Shown here: positions 4,988 to 41,271 of the stretch, piece by piece
How the letters are laid out: each line of letters starts with the position of its first letter
Numbering within the stretch: the first letter of the stretch is position 1
Origin: Podarcis tiliguerta
Lineage: Eukaryota
NCBI GenBank assembly: GCA_965153285.1
Contig: OZ229129.1
Reading direction: 5' to 3' (one strand)
Length of the DNA stretch: 64,000 nt
Notes under the pieces: generated by a model
The model's database searches: none
Told to the model about the DNA's origin: nothing
The model's input: the letters and a program-made list of their open reading frames with translations, nothing else
Translations under genes and position numbers: made by a program

Positions 4988-6908
4988 TAGAATCATAGAA
5001 TCATAGAATCATAGAATCATAGAGTTGGAAGAGACCACAAGGGTCATCGAGTCCAACCCCCTGCCAAGCAGGAAACACCATCAGAGCACTCCTGACATAT
5101 GGTTGTCAAGCCTCTGCTTAAAGACCTCCAAAGAAGGAGACTCCACCACACTCCTTGGCAGCAAATTCCACTGTCGAACAGCTCTTACTGTCAGGAAGTT
5201 CTTCCTAATGTTTAGGTGGAATCTTCTTTCTTGTAGTTTGGATCCATTGCTCCGTGTCCGCTTCTCTGGAGCAGCAGAAAACAACCTTTCTCCCTCCTCT
5301 ATGTGACATCCTTTTATATATTTGAACATGGCTATCATATCACCCCTTAACCTCCTCTTCTCCAGGCTAAACATGCCCAGCTCCCTTAGCCGTTCCTCAT
5401 AAGGCATCGTTTCCAGGCCTTTGACCATTTTGGTTGCCCTCCTCTGGACACGTTCCAGTTTGTCAATGTCCTTCTTGAACTGTGGTGCCCAGAACTGGAC
5501 ACAGTACTCCAGGTGAGGTCTGACCAGAGCAGAATACAGTGGCACTATAACTTCCCTTGATCTAGACGCTATACTCCTATTGATGCAGCCCAGAATTGCA
5601 TTGGCTTTTTTAGCTGCCGCGTCACACTGTTGGCTCATGTCAAGTTTGTGGTCAACCAAGACTCCTAGATCCTTTTCACATGTACTGCTCTCAAGCCAGG
5701 TGTCACCCATCTTGTATTTGTGCCTCTCATTTTTTTTGCCCAAGTGCAATACTTTACATTTCTCCCTGTTAAAATTCATCTTGTTTGTTTTGGCCCAGTT
5801 CTCTAATCTGTCAAGGTCGTTTTGAAGTGTGATCCTGTCCTCTGGGGTGTTAGCCACCCCTCCCAGTTTGGTGTCATCTGCAAATTTGATCAGGATGCCC
5901 TTGAGTCCATCATCCAAGTCGTTGATAAAGATGTTGAATAAGACCGGGCCCAAGACAGAACCCTGTGGCACCCCACTAGTCACTCTTCTCCAGGATGAAG
6001 AGGAACCATTGATGAGCACCCTTTGGGTCCGGTCAGTAAGCCAGTTACAAATCCACTGAGTGGTAGCATAGTCAAGACCGCATTTTACCAGCTTCTTTAC
6101 AAGAATATCATGGGGCACCTTGTCAAATGCCTTGCTGAAATCAAGGTAGACTACATCCACTGCGTTCCCTTCATCTACCAGGCTTGTAATTCTGTCAAAA
6201 AATGAGATCAGGTTAGTCTGACATGACTTATTTTTCAGAAATCCATGCTGACTATTGGTGATCACAGCATTCCTTTCTAGGTGCTCACAGATTGTTTGCT
6301 TAATGATCTGCTCCAGAATCTTCCCTGGTATTGATGTCAGACTGACTGGGCGGTAATTATTTGGGTCCTCTCTTTTCCCCTTTTTGAAAATAGGGACAAC
6401 ATTTGCCCTCCTCCAGTCTGCCGGGACTTCGCCTGTTCTCCAGGAATTCTCAAAGATGATTGCCAGTGGTTCTGAGATCACATCTGCCAGTTCTTTTAAT
6501 ACTCTTGGATGCAGTTCATCTGGCCCTGGAGACTTGAATACATCTAAACTAGCCAAGTATTCTTGTACTATCTCCTTAGTTATTCTGGGCTGTGTTTTCT
6601 CTGCTGAATCATTTGCTCCAAATTCTTCAGGTCGGGCATTGTTTTCTTTATCGGAGAAGACTGAGGCAAAGAAGGCATTGAGGAGTTCAGCCCTTTCTGT
6701 GTCCCCTGTTTGCATTTCACCATCTTCTCCTCTGAGTGACCCCACTGTTTCTTTGTTCTTCCTTTTGCTACGAACATACCCATAAAAGCCTTTTTTGTTG
6801 TTTTTAACCTCTCTAGCAAGCCTGAGTTCATTCTGTGCTTTAGCTTTTCTGACTTTGTGTCTACACGTGCTGGCTATTTGTTTGAATTCCTCTTTGGTGG
6901 TTTCCCCC
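4988..6908 (-). mobile_element. 5'-truncated young CR1 LINE with open ORF2 reverse-transcriptase frame and (ATTCTATG)n tail
   Basis: ORF 5081..6745(-) has [35 protein letters not shown] and RPHLEYC; the frame stays open to about 6907; plus-strand (agaatcat)n at 4989-5020. Confidence 0.95.
5081..6907 (-). pseudogene. CR1 ORF2 C-terminal part (RT domain), no endonuclease domain or start codon
   Basis: About 600 uninterrupted codons, truncated at the element's 5' end. Confidence 0.9.
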
Positions 6909-13193: not shown

Positions 13194-14782
13194 TTATACC
13201 CCAGCCACACTGGGCGGCTTCCAACAAAATATTAAAAATACAATAAAACACCAAACATTAAAAACTTCCCTAAACAGGGCTGCCTTCAGATGCCTTCTAA
13301 AAGTCAGATAGTTGTTTATTTCCTTGACATCTGATAAATTTATTTAAAATAAATCCATGGAGAATGCAGGTGGGCTTGCTAATATCTAAGCAATGATGGC
13401 TAAATGGAACCTCCATGTTAAAGTGGTAGCATATCACTGGCTACCATATGCATGAGCAGAGGAATAAACAACAGAGGAGGGCTACCTCCATCTATTCTTT
13501 GCCATTAGAGAGGATTAGAGAGACCTTGGTCAGATCCACTGAGTAATCCAATTCTGTTTTTTGCCCAACAGCAGAGGAACCTGTGACCCTTCAGATTATG
13601 TTGTCCTGCTTGGAGCAGCCAGCACGGCTAATGGTCAAGGATGAAGGAGGATGAAGATGATGGGAGATGGAGTCCAACAACACCTGGAGGGGCCACCACA
13701 GGTGCCCCAGCCCTGATACTGTAGTCATGCCAATGCTTAATGACTGGGTTGACCATCCACGTGCCAATGGAGGGGGGGGGGCTTTATTATGGCTGCTCCG
13801 ACCTTAAAACTAAATTCAATGGAGAGTCTTAAAGGCAGACTGGGTTTGTGGTGGGGGAAATGCTTCCTGGGAACTCATCCTGCACACAACCCTAGTGAAA
13901 ATGAGAGTGGCTCAAAAGCACTACCACGAATGGAGCATGCTCAAGAGAACCTCCTCTCCTCTGCTGGTGTTGGAAGGCTTCAAAAATTTGTGCTGTATAC
14001 AACATTGAAGTCTCACATCAGACATAACTGATATGTAAAAAGGACTTTATGATCTGAAAATAGAGACAAGGTATGTACTTTTGTAACCCAAGAAAATCTC
14101 TAATAAAAACAAATAAATGGGGGGGAAATTAAAATTCTGCCGGCTTCCATGTCAAGGACTAAATGGGGAGTGCTTTGGTTGTGGGATCTGATGGGGCATC
14201 ACTGTATATTCCTCCTTCTGAATTGCTGTTATCCCCAAGGGGAGGGGAAACTGAATCAATCAAATGTCTATCTCTTCATTCTGTCTTGGAGTGAGCAGCT
14301 GCACTGAGAACCACACCTGGGATTTTTATTTTTTTTAAAAAAAGGTTTTCATCCTGCAAAGCTCAATCTCCCTCATCACCAGAAATTGTTTATGGGAAAT
14401 TCAGGATTCCTGAGCCAACAAACATTTGTTATTACTCATCCTTTTGTCCAGGTTCCACTGATTACCTTGAGCCCAAGTCCAACTGAGATCAGGTGAGAAT
14501 GACTGACCGGCCGGACTACAATAAGCTTCCAGTGTGACATCGTTTCAGGCCAAATATGGAAATATAAATCTGATTCTAAAAATAAGAGTGAATCCCCCAA
14601 GTGATCCCCAGCTGCACTCATTTCCTTTTAGGGATCAAGTTTCCCACAGGAAAAATCATAAATAGGCACTTGGTAAATATATATATATATATATATATTT
14701 GCTTTCGTAGATTTTCACGGGTACAGGAATGCAGGTTTTGGTGTCCTCGGGTGTCTTCCCGTGTAAAAGTTGGGGTGTCTAG

Positions 14783-14820
14783 GCGACGTTTCGACGAGGT
14801 CTCACTCGTCATCTTCAGGC
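14783..14820 (-). ncRNA. Minimal type I hammerhead ribozyme motif, minus copy 1 (sense to RABGAP1 pre-mRNA)
   Basis: Exact reverse complement of 14887-14924. Confidence 0.65.
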
Positions 14821-14886
14821 TGGTGCTTTCGGCTTCTTGTTACTGGAACAGAGGTCTGTTCCAGTAACAAGAAGCCGAAAGCACCA

Positions 14887-14924
14887 GCCTGAAGATGACG
14901 AGTGAGACCTCGTCGAAACGTCGC
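14887..14924 (+). ncRNA. Minimal type I hammerhead ribozyme motif, plus copy 1
   Basis: gc-CTGAAGA-t-GACGAG-tgagac-CTCGTC-GAAA-CG-TC-gc: CUGANGA and GAAA cores, 6-bp stem II closed by G-C, palindromic ACGT stem III, GUC site after 14922. Stem I has only 2 contiguous bp. Confidence 0.65.
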
Positions 14925-15018
14925 CTAGACACCCCAACTTTTACACGGGAAGACACCCGAGGACACCAAAACCTGCATATATATATATATATATATATAT
15001 ATAAGTTGGGGTGTCTAG

Positions 15019-15056
15019 GCGACGTTTCGACGAGGTCTCACTCGTCATCTTCAGGC
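15019..15056 (-). ncRNA. Minimal type I hammerhead ribozyme motif, minus copy 2 (sense to RABGAP1 pre-mRNA)
   Basis: Identical motif, 236 nt from minus copy 1. Confidence 0.65.
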
Positions 15057-15122
15057 TGGTGCTTTCGGCTTCTTGTTACTGGAACAGAGCTCTGTTCCAG
15101 TAACAAGAAGCCGAAAGCACCA

Positions 15123-15160
15123 GCCTGAAGATGACGAGTGAGACCTCGTCGAAACGTCGC
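15123..15160 (+). ncRNA. Minimal type I hammerhead ribozyme motif, plus copy 2
   Basis: Identical motif, 236 nt from plus copy 1. Confidence 0.65.
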
Positions 15161-15209
15161 CTAGACACCCCAACTTTTACACGGGAAGACACCCGAGGAC
15201 ACCAAAACC

Positions 15210-15251
<42 letters not shown>

Positions 15252-17265: not shown

Positions 17266-17617
17266 TTTAACAAAGTCTAGGCATGTGCATCTGAATCAAA
17301 GAATCGGAAGAGACCCAGAGGGACCCATCTAGTCCAACCTCCTGCAATGCAGAAATCCTGCCCACAGCAGTCCCTGGGTGAGCTTGAAGCACCAGCCTCC
17401 TGGTTAACAGCCAGATCCACTGACCCACTGCACCACAGGCTCCCAGGAACGAATGAATCACATATTCTGTCTGTTCACCCCTGCCTCCCTTTCCCTTCAC
17501 TTCCTTTGATGTTTCACTTGTTATCTGCTCGTAGATTGTAAGGACGTTGGGACAAAGACCTGAAAAGCCTGTGCTTTTGTGTATATAGATGGCATAACAT
17601 ACGTGTACATGTGTTGT

Positions 17618-28993: not shown

Positions 28994-30052
28994 TTACGCA
29001 TGACACCCATTCGAAGGTCTTTTGCTCCTCGAGGCGGAGGACTCCTTTGGCGCCCGGTGCCTGGCGCAAGAGACACAAACAGCGCCAGAGAGGCGCTTCA
29101 AGCCTTTCTGAAAGACGCTGTTGGACAGGCTGTAGATGACACAGTTGCAGAAGCTGTTGCTGATGGCAAGCCAGGTGGTCAGGAAGGAGGCTGCTCGGCT
29201 GTGGTAGACAGAAGAGCTCTCCAGGAGGAAGTAGATTATGTAGGGGAGCCAGAGGATGTAGAAGACGCTGGTGATGCGCAGGAGAACCATGGCGTAGCGC
29301 TTGTCTGGGCACGGTTGGGCATCAGCCGCTTCCCCTTCTTGGGAGCTGAACCGCACGCGCCTCTCATTGATCTCTTTTGTGTGCTGCTGGCAAATGCGGA
29401 AGATGCTGAAGTAGGTGAAGCAGACCACGAAGGCTGCCGGCGCGTACAGCATGATGATGATGAAGAGGGTGAAGATGGCCCAAGTGTCCCAGGAGTCAGC
29501 ACACCACTGAAAAACATCCCCGTGGTAGCCGGGCTTTCCCCAGTCGAAGAAAGCCGGGAGGAACACGGCGCCCGAGTACAGCCAGATGAACAGGATGCAA
29601 ACCCGGAGGCGGCAGGGGGTGACCAGGGTGTTGTAGGACAGCGGCTTGGTGATGGCGATGTACCTGTCCACGCTGATGCAGGCCAGGGAGGTCATGGAGA
29701 CGCTCTTGAGCACGGAGACCACGTAGCCAAAGGCTCTGCAGATCACAGACTCCGGCAAGAAGGTGACCCGGTAGTGCAGCAGGGAGAGTGAAGGCACCAG
29801 GCAGCTCACACCCACCAGGAGGTCAGCGTAGGCCATGGTCTGGATGAAGTAGCTTGTGGTGTGGTGGTTCAGCAGTGGCGCACAGTGGAAGACGAAGATG
29901 ACCACAATGTTGCCCGAGATTATGAGGACGGTGAGGAAGACAATGACGATCAGCTCCAGCAGGCAGATGTCCAAGGCCTCCGGATAGCCGGCATCCAGGA
30001 GGCAGAAGGGCCTGCTGCTGCTGTGGTTGCTACCATCGAAGGAGGCATTCAT
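28994..30052 (-). CDS. GPR21: Orphan class A G protein-coupled receptor 21, 352 aa, uninterrupted CDS nested in the RABGAP1 intron
   Basis: Seven hydrophobic segments with GN (TM1), AYAD (TM2), DRY (TM3), LWLP (TM6) and NCVIY (TM7). ECL2 [14 protein letters not shown] and termini MNASFDG...PFCLL / ...NGCHA match GPR21 as remembered. ATG context aagATG. Confidence 0.96.
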
Positions 30053-30419
30053 CTTGCGTCGGTGGCAGAAACCCCCTCACTCTGCCGCCACTTATGCTGG
30101 ATGCTGCCTGGCTGCTTCTGCTGTCATTGCGGCTGCCACACGTGCCACCCTGTCAAAGCCCAAACAGGAGATGGGGAGGGATGCAGAGGCTTCCTGGAGC
30201 TGCTGGGCATTGTCCGCAGTGGCTCCCTCCTGGAAATATCAGCTCTGTGGGCTGCAGCCTCCACAGCCACCGCCCCCTCCTCCTCCTCCTCTCTCTCTCT
30301 CTGCTGGCAGCTCAGCAACACACCACGCACAGATGCGTGGAAAGGGGGGGGGCGATAGAGAAAAGGGATGGAGGGAAGCTCGCTTGCTTGTGCAATTGGG
30401 GGGGGGGGGGATGCAGCAA

Positions 30420-31130
30420 TAGCCACGCGAGGGCGGGTGCTAGATGAAAAGGAAAGGAGGGAGGGGTGCCTTTACAGCATCCCCCCTCCCATAGATTCAG
30501 GACGCGTACAAGCCGGCCTCCTCACCCACAACGCTGCAGGACTTCGGCTAGCCTCTCCGCAGCCGGCTGGAGAATGGGCGCCGCCGCCGCGCCGGATCCC
30601 GCACCTCTCCGTCGATGCAGGAGTGAGGAAGGAGGAGGAAGAAGAGAGGGTCCGGCCTGCGGGTCCCTCCCCCTCCCCCACGGCTGGGCTAGGCTGAGCT
30701 GCCCTCCTGCCTACCTGCAGCCGGGAGGGACAAAGGCGAAGCGAGCGCCGGGAGCAGACGCAGAGGGACGCGGCAGAGGCTGCTTTTGATGCGCCCAGCC
30801 AGGCAGAGCAGCTGCCGGCCGTAGAAGAGCCTGCGCGGCGCAGGGGGAGGAACCCAGGTGCGAGGGAGGGGGCGGACAAAGGCGGCGGCGGCGGCGGCGA
30901 CAAGAGAGGGTGGGGGCGCAGCCAAGAGCCTCCCTTCCGCGCCCGGATAGCCGCAGCAAAGGCGCGCGCGCCCTCGTTTCCCGGCTCGATCGCCGGTGCG
31001 CCCCCTCATCTCCAAAGAGGAGCGCCCCGCCCTTTAGCAAAGAGGGGCCGCGGCTGAGTCTGCCAGGAGCCGAGCCCACCCGCTTCCTTCTTCTGAAGGG
31101 GCTCTCGGAGGTGCGAAGAGTAATCGTGTG
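30420..31130 (-). promoter_or_regulatory. CpG island, putative GPR21 / internal RABGAP1 promoter and first exon
   Basis: Very high GC and CpG density (ggcggcggcggcggcggcg, cgcgcgcgcc, GC boxes) against a CpG-depleted background, directly 5' of GPR21. Confidence 0.8.
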
Positions 31131-31942
31131 CTCAGAGGTCCAGTTCCCTTACAGCTTTGCAACGCGTCTTTCCTTGGCTGATCACCAAGGCATTAAGTTG
31201 TTGTTTCCCCCCCAAAGCTGTCCTTCTTCACCTAAGATGTGCAGCAAAAATCCTAATATGCCCTTCTGAGTTAGACGCATGGGAGTGGGCTGCGAGGGGG
31301 CGGGGCAGATAGCATGCTTCGCACACATCCCAAAGTGCACGCTCTCTCCCAAGACACACTCTCCACGTGGTTTAAACCATCTGAACCCAACCCAGCTGGC
31401 ACACTCCCATGCCCACTGAGATGTTTAAGCTTGGCAGTTATGCTCTGCCATGCTCTTAACAGGTCCTATACAAAATCGCCACTAAATGATAGTGATCTGG
31501 ACATTATGGGGCAGACACAACTGAAAGATATCTGACTTACAATAAGTAGGAACTGTGCAAGAGCTTCCCTCAGAGGATAGCATCAAAGCCTCTATAGAAG
31601 CAAACACAATGGCTGCAATCCCTTGATCAAATCTTAGCTTAATAAGCCACCATATAAATTAGCTTCAAGCACCTGCATTTAGGCACTTCGCTCGCTCCTC
31701 TGTGTGAATGAATAAACCAGCCAGGAAGTCACAGTTAAGCCATAGTTTCCTGTTATGTCCAAATGGGGAAACTATGGCTTGTGGATCCCGAACAGGCCAG
31801 GACACAAAGACAACTTTAAACGTTTTTCATAGAAGCCACAACCTTGCTTCAGTGACACATACAACAGCCAAAATTGAGGCTAGCAGGTTCACACACAAAC
31901 TCTTTATAGGTAATAAAGGTCCTGGAAAACAAGCCTTATGAG

Positions 31943-32423
31943 CAGGGCTGTCTTTAGCATATGCGCCGCCGGGGTGCAAAGATCCGCCCAGTGCCCCCAA
32001 ATTTAGACTGCCCACGTCTACACCCAAGATATACTTCTCCCTGGTTGCAGGCAAGGCCATGGCGCTGGCGGCCTGCCCTTCTGAGTCTTGCTGCTGTTGC
32101 CCCTCAAGAATCGAGCGCCCGAGCTCCACAAAGGCACACAGCTTCATATCCAGGCACTTTTAAAAGCTCCCCAGGAGGAGGAAGGAGAAGAAGAGGGATG
32201 CAGCAGCCATGCTGATGGTGGGCGAGAAAGCAACGCCTCTCCATGAAGGCAGGACTCTGGGGAGGAGAAAGCGGCCGGGGGGAGGCCAGCTTTGAATGTC
32301 AGCTTGATCAAAATTACTTATTTTTTCATAACAGGTAGTTAAGAGCTTAGGTGGCTTCAGTGGTAGGGCCCCCCCAGAATTCAGCGCCGGGGTGCCCTGG
32401 ACCCCTAAGTAAATACAGCCCTG
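31943..32423. mobile_element. hAT-type non-autonomous DNA transposon
   Basis: TIR cagggctgt/acagccctg; perfect 8-bp TSD cttatgag at 31935-31942 and 32424-32431. Confidence 0.85.
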
Positions 32424-33468: not shown

Positions 33469-35739
33469 TATTCTATAACCAGTGGTTTGAACTGTACTGA
33501 GAGAGGAATGGAAGCCAGAACTCAACTGATTTAATCCACAAAGAGTTCTGTAAATGGGTGTCAGCACTGCTATTGGGACAATACCCACCTGCCTGTTGGG
33601 GGACGAAGTGCCAATCCCAATCTGTGCTGTTGTGAAGTGACAGCCAGATTTATTTGACACATGCCTGGATATGTATTCTCTGAAAAACTTTCTGACTAGT
33701 TGAACGGAAAGGCAAAAGGGCCAGAAGATTTACTGCAGCAGCTCTCACTTCATCCAGTTCTATTCGCTCCGGAGACATCTGCTGGGGAAATGGCTCCAGA
33801 GCAGCAGCTGCTGCTGCCAACACAGATGGGTGTGTTAACGTAAGGGCCTTCTGCCATGTGGGGCATGGACCCACCAGGGAGGACAGAGGGGCAAAAGTCA
33901 TCAAGGGCAAACTTCTCAAACAAAGGTTTTGAGTCCTAGCTGAGAAAGGGAGTTGGTTTTTAGAGATATCCCAACCGACAGGCCTTTCAGACACTCCACC
34001 AGCTCCTTTTGAAATGCATTTACTCAGCATCTCCAGTGAAAATAGCCAGAGGGCCACCAGAAAGAGGCTTCCCACATTTGATGCATTCAGTGTTTCTGTT
34101 TTGTTCTGCAGAGCTCAACTGGAAGCTACAGGATGAGGGATTGCTCCTGCGCTCAAATCCTGCTTGTTGGTTTCCCAGAGACACCTGGCTTGCCACTGTG
34201 AAAATGGGAGGCTGTGCTGTGTGGGCCCCTGGTCTGCTTTTTCAGGCTCCTCTTATGTGCCCAAAGGACTCCTCTCGACTCCAAGCCTGACAGCAGTTCA
34301 TTAACCTGCCAGGGAAACTAGGCGAGTCCATCAGGGTTGCATTATGGATCTCCTCATTTGTTGCTCCCCTTTTGCTGAGCCAGCACAAGCTGAAGCAGCA
34401 GCTTGCTGGGTCAGTGGAGCAGCTACTCATGCGGAAGGAGAAGCCAAACAGCCATTTGTGGCTCAGTGCAGCCTCTAAAAAGAAACAACACAGAAAAATT
34501 CAGCCTGTTTAAAAATAAAAACGCATAGTGACAGAAGGATGGATGCTGGTCTGGCTATCAAAGTAAAGCAAGAGATCAAAATTCCCAGGGAGAAAAATCA
34601 GACCCTGGTCCTTTGCCCCAACCCTCTCAAAGAAGGGAGAGACCCGGAGGACCAAGCTAGGCTAGAAAGTGCATATCTTGGCTTCTACAACATCCTTCTG
34701 GGTTTCTAGGCATGTAGCCTTTAAAAGCAGGGGCAAGAGAAGATGGAAAAGGTCTATAGCTCAGTGGCAGAGCATCTGGCTTGAAAGCAGATGGTCACAG
34801 GTTCAATTCCAGGCATCACCAGGTAGAGTTGGGAAAGAACCGTGTCTGGAACCCTGGAGAGTCACTGCCAGTCAGCATAAACAATATGGAGATAGATTGA
34901 AATAAAGAACATAAGAATAACCTGGTGGATCAGGCCAATAGCTCATCTAGTTCAGCATCCTGTTCTCACAGTGGCCAGCCAGATGGCTGGAAGCAAGATC
35001 CTGCAAGCAAGATTTGAGCACAAGAGCCCTCTCTCCTCCTGTGGTTTCCAGCAACTGAAGCATCGCTGCCTCCTGTGGAGGCAGAACCTGGTATGACACA
35101 CTATAAAGGAAGCTTCTTCCTATGTTTTTAAAGCCACGAAATTTGGGGGGACAGGAACCTGAAGATTTTGAAAGGGGCTATTTAAGTTCCTATTTAACTT
35201 CCTAAGAATTGGAAGCTGGCACCCAGAAAGCCAGTGGTATTTCTTTTCCTTCTCAGACTGCATTCGCTGTTTCCCAAGTGAATGCAAATTCTACACCAAG
35301 CTCACCCAAAATTCTGAGAGCATTGTTATTCAAAATGCAAATGAGTCTGCAGAAAACCAGTTCTCCTCCTGATGTCCCCCCCCCCAAAGACCAGGAGAGC
35401 AACAGCATGGAGAGAAAGAAAAATCTCCTGCAAATCAAGCACAGTCAGGATGCTGAAGAAGAGTGGAGAGGTGCTGTTTTAGGATAGCAAAAAAAGTAGG
35501 CATGTGAGAGCATCATCTACTTTTGGGCAAGAGAGAACAGAACCACAGCAACCAGACTTCTTGCTTGCTTGTCTGCCTAGCAAACTCCAATCCATCAAAA
35601 CTGGCATTTTTGACAGAATTCTGATTGGAGGCCAGCACCTGCCTGGGAGATGACATTATCTGGAAAACTGATGGTGGCTATTGGGAGAAAGGGGCGGAGA
35701 GGCTGGTGGGTAGCGTGGCCCAATCAAGAAGATCTAGGA

Positions 35740-40112: not shown

Positions 40113-40251
40113 CTGGAAGAGAGGAAGGAGACCAGACATCAGACCAGGAAGGGCGTGCAGGATACAGACCATGGACTGAATGGTTTTGGGTGACTCCAAC
40201 ATCCACATTGATGATGCCTCAGGTCCATGATGCAACCATGGGCCTGTCTCA

Positions 40252-40289
40252 GTATCTGAAGAAGTGTACATGAACACGAAACCTTATAC
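40252..40289 (+). ncRNA. Degenerate minimal hammerhead ribozyme motif
   Basis: GTAT-CTGAAGA-a-GTGT-acatga-ACAC-GAAA-cc-TT-ATAC: 4-bp stem I, 4-bp stem II, intact cores; stem III is not palindromic (ACCT). Confidence 0.55.
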
Positions 40290-40381
40290 CAAGAACAAGC
40301 TTAGTTGGTCTCTAAGGTGCTACTGGACAATTTTTATATATATTTCGACTGCGTCAGACCAACACGGCTACCTACCTGAAT
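40252..40381 (+). mobile_element. 130-bp Penelope/Neptune-like 3' fragment with 8-bp TSD, beginning with a hammerhead-like fold
   Basis: TSD ctgtctca at 40244-40251 and 40382-40389. The tail gttggtctctaaggtgctac...cagaccaacacggctacc resembles reptile Penelope-like 3' ends as remembered. Confidence 0.65.
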
Positions 40382-41271
40382 CTGTCTCACACAGTTATGG
40401 GTCCAATGCACAGAAGTAGCCTTTGATCTACGTAGGGAGGGGAGGGGTCTGGAAATGGTGTGTGTTTGATTATCACCCCATTGTCATAGTCAGATTACTT
40501 CCTGGTGAGGTTTGGACTTGCTATGTCTGTCCCTCCTTTCAAGGGTGGGAGACCAGTTGGGATGGTCTGCCACCAGAAACAGATGGAATTGGGTGGATTC
40601 TTGACTCCTCTGGGGAATTTCCCTGTGGACAGAGGGGGTGTTCCTGTTGAGGTCCTAGTTCCACTATGGAATGGTGAGACTCATAGGGCCTTTGACATGA
40701 TCACTTCTGAGCACCCTCTCTGGCCCTGTGGGGTCTGTTTCACGGCTTGGTACATGGAGGAGTTGAGGTCAGTGAGGCAGAATGGGAGAGGGTTGGAGAA
40801 TAAGAGGCACAAATCTCACTAAGGAGCTAACTGAGCACTTGTTCAAGATCACAATCAGGCCTACCATGTGGGAGTGAGGGCAGCAAAGAGATCCTATTTC
40901 ACTGCCTCCATTGCATCCTTGGGAAGCCGCCCAGCAGAACTGTTCTGTGTGGTCTGCAGGTTGCTTACTCCTGACCAGGAGGTGCATCTCTGGAGCACAC
41001 AGCAACTAGCTGTATTCACTTCAAGCGAAACACTTCAAGGATAAAGTTGCTCAGCTCTACAGTGATTTAGAAGCTGCTACTGTGAGAGTACCTGACCAGG
41101 TGTTCAATGCAACATCGAGCTCGGTGTTGTGAGATCATTTCCAATTGCTGTGGTCTGGGAATACGGACAGGACACATGAAGTGATCCTTGTCCATCCTGG
41201 CTTATTAAAACTAGCTGGGCTGGGGTGACTGGACGGGTCAAAGGTGTGATAAGTGCATCCTTGTGTGATAA

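What the first reader, a model, noticed from the sequence alone, without database searches (positions are those of the whole stretch)
14677..15248. Four hammerhead-ribozyme motifs, two per strand, in a tandem double palindrome inside the RABGAP1 intron
Seen: four identical copies of CTGAAGA-t-GACGAG-tgagac-CTCGTC-GAAA-CGTC, with cores at 14785-14818(-), 14889-14922(+), 15021-15054(-) and 15125-15158(+). Each has the CUGANGA/GAAA core, a 6-bp stem II, one extra U after A9, a GUC site and a loopless self-complementary ACGT stem III. Same-strand copies are exactly 236 nt apart. Established: Penelope-like elements and animal retrozymes carry minimal type I hammerheads whose palindromic stem III forms only as a dimer of two tandem copies. 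Inference: each strand has the tandem pair needed for dimeric cleavage, and the minus pair lies in the RABGAP1 pre-mRNA downstream of GPR21, so it could cut the nascent transcript. Caveats: stem I has only 2 contiguous bp, and the long hairpins would compete with ribozyme folding.
Basis: partly seen in the sequence, partly recalled or inferred. Interest (0 to 1): 0.85.

Follow-up and report, generated by a model that had tools for sequence, protein, structure and literature searches.

The report
Truncated Penelope-like retrotransposon copies with hammerheads
The four hammerhead motifs are real, but they are one motif copied four times in a very young, dead-on-arrival Penelope-like retrotransposon insertion in a (TA)n microsatellite, a well-described arrangement that is unlikely to cut the host gene's RNA.

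Summary
The 34-nt motif occurs four times, exactly as listed, and nowhere else in the window. The four copies are not independent: one 125-nt arm is inverted into a palindrome, and a 236-nt unit is then repeated in tandem.

The motif fits the "minimal hammerhead" of metazoan Penelope-like elements (Cervera & de la Peña 2014): an extra base after A9, a G10.1-C11.1 pair, a 6-bp helix II and a loopless ACGU helix III.

Its layout matches the tested Poseidon element of Anolis (PAc, Frangieh 2024):
- The element's start codon lies inside the ribozyme.
- Three arms end 84 nt after that ATG.
- One arm carries a further ~31-nt "tail", to about +115. PAc's reverse-transcription start sites bound a tail at nt 85-119.
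- All copies abut (TA)n.
- The encoded 37-aa peptide is 68% identical to the N-terminus of a database protein that, by eye, aligns with the PAc ORF.

The arms are identical and keep their CpGs, so the insertion is very young.

Cleavage of the host pre-mRNA is unlikely: helix I has 2 bp, each ribozyme lies next to its perfect antisense, and PAc's hammerhead cleaves only with its own protein. Reads could not be examined. A follow-up on another locus of this genome (s1-830570) reached the same reading.

The parts
14678..14699 (.). (TA)11, left remnant of the target microsatellite
   Evidence: Sequence; D2 repeat family
14698..14728 (-). Optional PLE 'tail': continuation of the element ORF from +85 to about +115-118 after the ATG. 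Its outer limit is ambiguous inside the AATATA that merges into (TA)n
   Evidence: The frame stays open through it. The tail-encoded TRENLRK is identical in P0002. PAc's tail spans nt 85-119
14729..14853 (-). Arm L1: 5'-truncated PLE copy (-40 to +84 relative to the ATG at 14812-14810), sense on the minus strand
14785..14818 (-). Minimal hammerhead motif, copy 1
14854..14978 (+). Arm R1: 5'-truncated PLE copy (-40 to +84; ATG at 14895-14897), ends at (TA)n without a tail. Its base 14854 is the only difference among the four arms
14889..14922 (+). Minimal hammerhead motif, copy 2 (predicted cut after 14922)
14977..15003 (.). (TA)13 between the two 236-nt units
15004..15089 (-). Arm L2: 86 nt (-40 to +46). 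It lacks its outer 39 nt, so it cannot be an independent target-primed copy
15021..15054 (-). Minimal hammerhead motif, copy 3
15090..15214 (+). Arm R2: full 125-nt arm (-40 to +84; ATG at 15131-15133), ends at (TA)n
15125..15158 (+). Minimal hammerhead motif, copy 4 (predicted cut after 15158)
15213..15248 (.). (TA)18, right remnant of the target microsatellite

Best explanation
The locus is a very young, non-coding ('dead-on-arrival') compound insertion of a Poseidon/Penelope-clade Penelope-like retrotransposon (PLE) into a (TA)n microsatellite in an intron. Each arm is the pLTR/ORF junction of the element: 40 nt of upstream sequence, the family's minimal hammerhead with the ORF start codon embedded in it (A9-U-G10.1 = AUG), and the first 84 nt of the ORF. 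The copies point outward from a shared centre. Their outer ends lie where this class of element is known to start reverse transcription: +84 in three arms and about +115-118 in the one arm with the 'tail'. Inferred: L1 and R1 arose from target-primed reverse transcription on both strands of one break in AT-rich DNA, as the PAc enzyme does in vitro. Inferred: the second unit (truncated L2 + R2) arose secondarily, either as a 236-bp duplication or as a 5'-truncated retro-copy of a hairpin transcript. The hammerhead motif is inherited cargo of the element. At this locus it is most probably inert, and transcripts of either strand should fold into perfect hairpins with stems of about 86-125 bp (about 215 bp if the two units pair with each other).
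For: 1. The motif has every extra hallmark of the PLE min-HHR listed by Cervera & de la Pena: a nucleotide between A9 and G10.1, a G10.1-C11.1 pair, a long helix II, and palindromic 15.2-16.2 with no loop 3. The same paper describes opposed motif pairs 100-700 bp apart and the presence of such motifs in reptiles.
2. The Poseidon_Ac tandem junction reads ...CUCUGAGG|AUGCCUGCCAUAGAUGUGGGCGAAACGUC|A. It has the same architecture and the same GAAACGUC. Helix II stays paired through 3 double-sided changes and 1 single-sided change relative to the window's motif (compared by eye).
3. PAc's ORF starts at stem II. Its RT starts internally in an AC-rich region, its tail spans nt 85-119, it cuts AT-rich DNA, and it cleaves and extends both strands. 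Here the arms end at +84, the tail runs from +85 to about +115-118, and all ends abut (TA)n.
4. The 37-aa peptide read from the embedded ATG through the tail is 68% identical to residues 1-37 of P0002 (E 4e-4 against 1.8 billion proteins; pairwise E 1e-13). P0002 residues ~34-150 align by eye at ~50% with PAc ORF residues ~37-150.
5. The arms are identical, with CpG o/e 0.95 against 0.29 for the window, so the insertion is recent.
6. Craig et al. 2021 describe 5'-truncated, tandem/inverted PLE insertions with a 30-40 bp tail at one end and a microsatellite bias.
7. Scan notes list many similar (TA)n-embedded PLE palindromes in this genome. One follow-up reached the same reading. These are leads, not proof.
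Against: The comparisons with PAc were made by eye from the paper's supplement, not with an alignment tool. The window's reading frame relative to GAAACGUC differs from PAc's by one base, because the loop is 6 nt rather than 7. The equal length of the two arms of each palindrome is not explained by two independent truncations and needs an extra step, such as a common RNA 5' end, a template jump or a snap-back. No read data support the 236-bp repeat or show that the RNA is uncleaved.
Confidence: 0.88

Rival explanations
1. One reading: the same-strand pairs form active double hammerheads that cleave the nascent RABGAP1 pre-mRNA (minus strand) or an antisense transcript.
For: The catalytic core is intact and the ACGU helix III is palindromic. 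Two copies per strand lie 236 nt apart. Related PLE min-HHRs show weak dimer-dependent cleavage in vitro. PAc's HHR cleaves when its protein is present, with a C3G/G8C rescue.
Against: Helix I has 2 bp. The double-HHR fold scores -18.1 kcal/mol against an MFE of -29.4 even for isolated 62-mers. Each ribozyme is transcribed right after its perfect antisense, and the locus folds as a hairpin at about -480 kcal/mol with z about -48. PAc's HHR is inactive without protein and no RNA-seq ends map to its site. The insertion is too young to be a conserved host function. Rfam hammerhead models give no hit, even on an 89-nt slice.
Confidence: 0.05
2. The 236-nt unit is a retrozyme-like, non-autonomous PLE derivative. 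Cleavage at two same-strand sites would release a 236-nt hairpin RNA that is circularised and can be copied back next to itself, which would explain unit 2.
For: The unit length is within the 170-400 nt range of animal non-LTR retrozymes. Retrozymes have been argued to derive from PLE pLTRs. L2 is truncated at its outer end while R2 ends exactly at +84. That is what a 5'-truncated cDNA of a hairpin RNA primed at the normal RT start site would look like.
Against: There are only two units. Retrozymes carry canonical type I hammerheads with loop-loop contacts, not min-HHRs. The unit boundaries are (TA)n, not the ribozyme cut sites. A plain 236-bp duplication at an unstable palindrome/(TA)n explains the same structure. 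Expression data could not be obtained.
Confidence: 0.04
3. It is a fold-back or MITE-type DNA transposon unrelated to PLEs, and its hammerhead-like string is a coincidence.
For: It is a near-perfect palindrome flanked by TA repeats. A single descriptor hit is expected about 0.02 times per 64 kb by chance, which means hundreds of chance hits per vertebrate genome.
Against: The ATG-initiated frame, the peptide homology to a PLE N-terminus, and the end positions at +84 and about +115-118 matching PAc are not expected of a DNA transposon. The arm carries all four extra min-HHR hallmarks.
Confidence: 0.01
4. Sub-claim only: the tandem repeat of the 236-nt unit is an assembly artefact at a palindrome/(TA)n, and the real locus holds one palindrome.
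For: Craig et al. note that complex PLE insertions often cause assembly problems. The two units differ at one base, plus one position at the (TA)n junction.
Against: The units differ in structure (L1 full with tail, L2 truncated) and at the centre base, which a simple collapse or expansion error would not create.
Confidence: 0.1

Closest known systems
Minimal hammerheads (min-HHR) of metazoan Penelope-like elements (Cervera & de la Pena 2014, PMC4209133)
   Same: CUGANGA/GAAA core, one unpaired nucleotide between A9 and G10.1, a G10.1-C11.1 pair, a 6-bp helix II, no loop 3 with palindromic 15.2-16.2 (dimer-only helix III), opposed pairs a few hundred bp apart, and occurrence in reptile genomes.
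   Different: Helix I has only 2 contiguous bp, against the 4-5 bp typical of the consensus. It resembles the 2-bp helix I of the D. virilis variant and the ~3 bp of PAc.
PAc / Poseidon_Ac of Anolis carolinensis (Frangieh et al. 2024, PMC11167929)
   Same: The start codon is embedded in the ribozyme (A9-U-G10.1) and the GAAACGUC is identical. The insertion ends fall at about +84, with an optional ~31-34 nt tail to about +115-119. The target is AT-rich and both DNA strands are used. The N-terminal ORF region is homologous via P0002.
   Different: It is a different family: helix II, loop 2 and the flanks have diverged, loop 2 is 6 nt rather than 7 so the ORF reads the core in another frame, and the locus holds only the first 28-38 codons with no RT or endonuclease.
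Animal non-LTR retrozymes (Cervera & de la Pena 2020, PMC7229834; Li et al. 2026 bioRxiv)
   Same: A tandem unit of a few hundred nt with a type I hammerhead in each unit, and a PLE-related origin.
   Different: Here there are only two units. The hammerhead is the minimal form without loop-loop contacts, the unit is a palindrome with motifs on both strands, and no circular RNA has been shown.

Membership tests
PLE minimal hammerhead (min-HHR) | Conserved core boxes CUGANGA and GAAA with a UH cleavage site | tested here: met
   CUGAAGA ... GAAA ... GUC in all four copies
PLE minimal hammerhead (min-HHR) | Unpaired nucleotide between A9 and G10.1, with a G10.1-C11.1 pair | tested here: met
   Extra U, then GACGAG/CUCGUC. 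The criteria are listed
PLE minimal hammerhead (min-HHR) | Long helix II (6-8 bp) | tested here: met
   6 bp with a 6-nt loop. It forms in the MFE of the isolated arm
PLE minimal hammerhead (min-HHR) | No or minimal helix III, with palindromic 15.2-16.2, so that helix III forms only in a dimer | tested here: met
   A-CG-U with no loop
PLE minimal hammerhead (min-HHR) | Helix I of about 4-5 bp | tested here: not met
   Only 2 contiguous pairs, and adding them raises the computed energy. The D. virilis PLE variant also has 2 bp
PLE minimal hammerhead (min-HHR) | Location in a PLE pLTR / pLTR-ORF junction | tested here: met
   The embedded ATG opens a frame homologous to a PLE-type N-terminus, with the same layout as PAc
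PLE minimal hammerhead (min-HHR) | Self-cleavage as a dimer | not testable with these tools
   Needs in vitro transcription or end-specific RNA sequencing.
Poseidon/Penelope-clade PLE insertion | 3' ends at the internal RT start sites, with an optional 30-40 nt tail at one end | tested here: met
   Ends at +84 (x3) and about +115-118 (x1), against a PAc tail at nt 85-119
Poseidon/Penelope-clade PLE insertion | AT-rich or microsatellite target, 5' truncation, tandem/inverted arrangement | tested here: met
   (TA)n at every outer end, and arms starting at -40 in head-to-head plus tandem order. Described
Poseidon/Penelope-clade PLE insertion | ORF with a telomerase-like RT and a GIY-YIG endonuclease | tested here: not met
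   The locus holds only 28-38 codons, so it is a truncated, non-autonomous remnant. The only RT ORF in the window (5081-6745, minus strand) is LINE-like
Canonical type I hammerhead (Rfam Hammerhead_1 and related models) | Match to the covariance model; helix III hairpin; loop 1-loop 2 contacts | tested here: not met
   No hammerhead hit at E<=10 in 3 kb or in an 89-nt slice, no loop 1, and no helix III hairpin
Animal non-LTR retrozyme | Tandem repeats of about 170-400 bp, each with a canonical type I hammerhead, expressed as circular RNA | tested here: inconclusive
   The unit size fits (236 nt x2). The hammerhead is the minimal rather than the canonical type. Expression could not be tested

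The most novel reading that the evidence does not exclude
The palindromic 236-nt unit is itself a mobile, non-autonomous 'hairpin mini-PLE'. A fold-back RNA would carry the RT entry site at its 3' end and minimal hammerheads in both polarities. It would be copied next to itself by the PLE enzyme, and perhaps processed into a rod-like circular RNA. That would link PLE inverted insertions to retrozyme-like or viroid-like RNA circles in a vertebrate.
Probability: 0.04. Interest if true: 0.6.

Novelty: new member of a known kind. Interest (0 to 1): 0.15.

Why it matters
It matters little for ribozyme biology. This is the expected cargo of a Penelope-like element, in an arrangement already described: inverted and tandem 5'-truncated copies in a microsatellite. 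Its modest value is as a clean natural footprint. The outer ends at +84 and about +115-118, on opposite strands of one (TA)n target, match at near-nucleotide resolution what the purified Anolis PAc enzyme does in vitro (two internal RT start sites, both DNA strands extended). The insertion's youth suggests the family was recently active in this genome. For annotation, such loci should be masked as PLE fragments and not reported as host ribozymes. The perfect intronic hairpin and the palindrome/(TA)n DNA may matter more to the host, as double-stranded RNA and as a site of local instability, than the ribozyme core does.

Tried and rejected
- Rfam scans at E<=10 on 3 kb and on an 89-nt slice, and at gathering thresholds on the whole window, gave no hammerhead family. 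The only hits were spurious miRNA/sok matches caused by the long hairpin.
No runs were obtained and read laying could not be used.
No nucleotide-level covariation within the family could be tested.
- The search of protein representatives gave two hits. P0001 (830 aa) is spurious: a repetitive protein with weak internal matches and a Neuraminidase-like repeat. P0002 is the real hit.
- The protein-atlas search on P0002 gave no usable hit. The listing of cluster members showed a singleton from a Logan contig with no name.
- A BLAST of the arm and the tail against the rest of the window found no other copies.
- The search of earlier findings by sequence was blank, which per the operators means nothing.
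- Six ORFs near 40 kb were scanned in Pfam to verify RABGAP1 exons, with no hits. The host-gene assignment therefore rests on the confirmed GPR21 orthologue and on general knowledge that GPR21 is nested in RABGAP1.
- The post-cleavage 85-nt 3' region shows no significant fold (z -0.55).
- The PAc sequences from the paper's supplement were compared by eye only. I did not type them into alignment tools, because they have no reference id.
- The prokaryote-type promoter/terminator scan is irrelevant here.

Full report
OBSERVATION. The region reads as follows:
- (TA)11 at 14678-14699
- a 29-31 nt non-palindromic stretch at about 14698-14728
- a 125-nt arm at 14729-14853
- its inverted copy at 14854-14978
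- (TA)13
- an 86-nt arm at 15004-15089
- a full 125-nt inverted arm at 15090-15214
- (TA)18 up to 15248.

There is no further copy at up to 3 mismatches. Same-strand copies are 236 nt apart.

I wrote a descriptor for the minimal hammerhead: CUGANGA, 0-1 extra nt, a 4-9 bp helix II, GAAA, a palindromic insert, then U and H. It finds only these four sites in the 64 kb, against 0.02 per window in shuffles. The same scan confirms the 6-bp helix II, the extra U, the loopless ACGU helix III, the GUC site and the 2-bp helix I.

The four arms are identical except for base 14854 at one palindrome centre. The real count is therefore one motif, inverted and then repeated.

WHAT THE MOTIF IS. Rfam's hammerhead models do not recognise it, even on an 89-nt slice at E<=10. 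That is expected for a motif with no helix III hairpin and no loop 1.

It fits the "min-HHR" that Cervera & de la Pena (2014) defined in the pseudo-LTRs of metazoan Penelope-like elements (PLEs). That paper lists features that were not part of its search descriptor but recur in the hits:
- a G10.1-C11.1 pair
- a larger helix II
- palindromic 15.2-16.2.

It also reports pairs of motifs 100-700 bp apart on opposite strands, and families of such motifs in reptiles. All of these features are met here. Only helix I is shorter (2 bp) than the 4-5 bp consensus. The D. virilis PLE variant also has 2 bp.

WHAT THE LOCUS IS. The closest experimentally studied relative is PAc, the Poseidon element of Anolis carolinensis (Frangieh et al. 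2024).

In its Repbase consensus, given in the paper's supplement, the tandem junction reads ...CUCUGAGG|AUGCCUGCCAUAGAUGUGGGCGAAACGUC|A. It has a CUGANGA box, and the ORF start codon supplies A9, the extra U and G10.1. A 6-bp helix II and the same GAAACGUC follow.

Compared by eye with the window's GACGAG/CUCGUC, PAc's GCCUGC/GUGGGC keeps all six pairs, through three double-sided changes and one single-sided change.

The paper reports the following about PAc:
- The ORF begins at stem II.
- Reverse transcription starts internally, in an AC-rich region.
- The optional "tail" of genomic copies spans about nt 85-119 from the AUG.
- The endonuclease prefers AT-rich DNA.
- Both DNA strands are cleaved and extended.

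In the window, the ATG inside each motif opens a frame. Three arms end at +84, directly against (TA)n. The leftmost, minus-strand arm continues for about 31 more nt, to about +115-118, before (TA)n, and the frame stays open.

This 37-aa peptide was searched against 1.84 billion representative proteins. It hit residues 1-37 of P0002, a 189-aa protein, at 68% identity. The ten HHR-encoded residues and the tail-encoded TRENLRK are identical.

Beyond residue 34, P0002 aligns by eye at roughly 50% with PAc ORF residues ~37-150, for example LYGE..FQ.TR..EKL...LC..FL..CRD..IP. The arms are therefore the pLTR/ORF junction of a Poseidon-type PLE.

The 29-31 nt "unique" stretch is the PLE tail, not host DNA.

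Craig et al. (2021) describe this anatomy for PLEs in general: strong 5' truncation, partial tandems, an adjacent inverted 5'-truncated copy, a 30-40 bp tail at one end, and a microsatellite bias.

AGE AND ORIGIN OF THE REPEAT. The arms have CpG o/e 0.95, against 0.29 for the window, and are identical to one another. The insertion is therefore very recent and cannot be a conserved feature of the host gene.

L1 (with tail) and R1 (without tail) have different 3' ends. This points to two separate RT initiations on opposite strands of one break. That step is an inference from PAc's in vitro behaviour.

L2 lacks its outer 39 nt. It cannot be an independent target-primed copy, because such copies are complete at their 3' end. 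Both palindromes also share the same centre. Unit 2 is therefore secondary. It is either a 236-bp duplication at an unstable palindrome/(TA)n, or a 5'-truncated retro-copy of a hairpin transcript primed at R's normal start site. I cannot tell these apart.

WILL IT CLEAVE? The evidence argues against it.
- For isolated 62-nt dimers, the domain-swapped double-hammerhead fold scores -18.1 kcal/mol against an MFE of -29.4, and the 2-bp helix I is destabilising.
- In transcripts of either strand, each ribozyme is synthesised directly after its perfect antisense. The locus folds into perfect hairpins at about -480 kcal/mol, z about -48.
- Published min-HHRs cleave poorly even as dimers.
- PAc's hammerhead is inactive without PAc protein and is dispensable for insertion in vitro. 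It leaves no RNA-seq ends at its site in Anolis.

I therefore rate cleavage of the host pre-mRNA at about 5%.

HOST CONTEXT. A GPR21 orthologue lies at 28994-30052 on the minus strand (E 3e-178 to solved GPR21 structures). The locus is about 13.7 kb downstream of it on that strand. RABGAP1 exons were not verified. That GPR21 is nested in RABGAP1 is general knowledge and was not tested here.

COMPARISON WITH KNOWN SYSTEMS AND NOVELTY. The locus works like, and passes the membership tests for, a PLE min-HHR within a truncated Poseidon-type PLE insertion. It fails the tests for a canonical type I hammerhead. It is at best an incomplete match to animal non-LTR retrozymes: the unit size fits, but the ribozyme is of the wrong type, there are only two units, and no circle has been shown.

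Scan notes list many similar (TA)n-embedded PLE palindromes in this genome. A follow-up agent on another locus (s1-830570) reached the same reading. I treat these as leads. My conclusion rests.

LIMITS.
- The PAc comparisons were made by eye, because the supplement's sequences have no reference id and were not typed into tools.
- No public-collection DNA scan was run with letters of this stretch.

VERDICT. This is an ordinary, very young remnant of a Penelope-like element that carries its family's known minimal hammerhead. Interest is low.

Noticed in passing
window 5081-6745 (-): A 554-aa ORF with an RVT_1 domain. Its closest solved relatives are LINE-1 ORF2 and R2 proteins, so it is a LINE-type reverse transcriptase and not the PLE that produced the palindrome. 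Neighbouring ORFs gave no Pfam hits.
   Followed up: partly
window 28994-30052 (-): An intact 352-aa single-exon GPCR. Its best match is solved human GPR21 (E 3e-178), ahead of GPR52, so it is the GPR21 orthologue.
   Followed up: yes
window 40244-40389 (+): A second hammerhead-like string, CTGAAGA-A-GTGT-ACATGA-ACAC-GAAAC, noted by another reader. It has the extra base after A9 and a G-C closing pair, but it is followed by CTTATACC (no GUH, no palindromic helix III). It failed my min-HHR descriptor and Rfam. It is probably a decayed motif from another retroelement family.
   Followed up: partly
window 34751-34821 (+) and 17369-17442 (-): Two weak tRNA-model matches at about the Rfam gathering score (31.6 and 29.0 bits) with several mispairs. 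They look like tRNA-derived SINE heads rather than tRNA genes.
   Followed up: no
window 30001-32000: GC rises to 0.58 just upstream of GPR21 on the minus strand, against about 0.47 elsewhere. This is consistent with the CpG island noted by another reader.
   Followed up: no
window 14854 vs 15090: The only difference between the two 236-nt units outside (TA)n is the central base of the palindrome (G vs C). Unit 2 is a perfect palindrome (AGAGCTCT), while unit 1 is off by one base (AGAGGTCT).
   Followed up: yes
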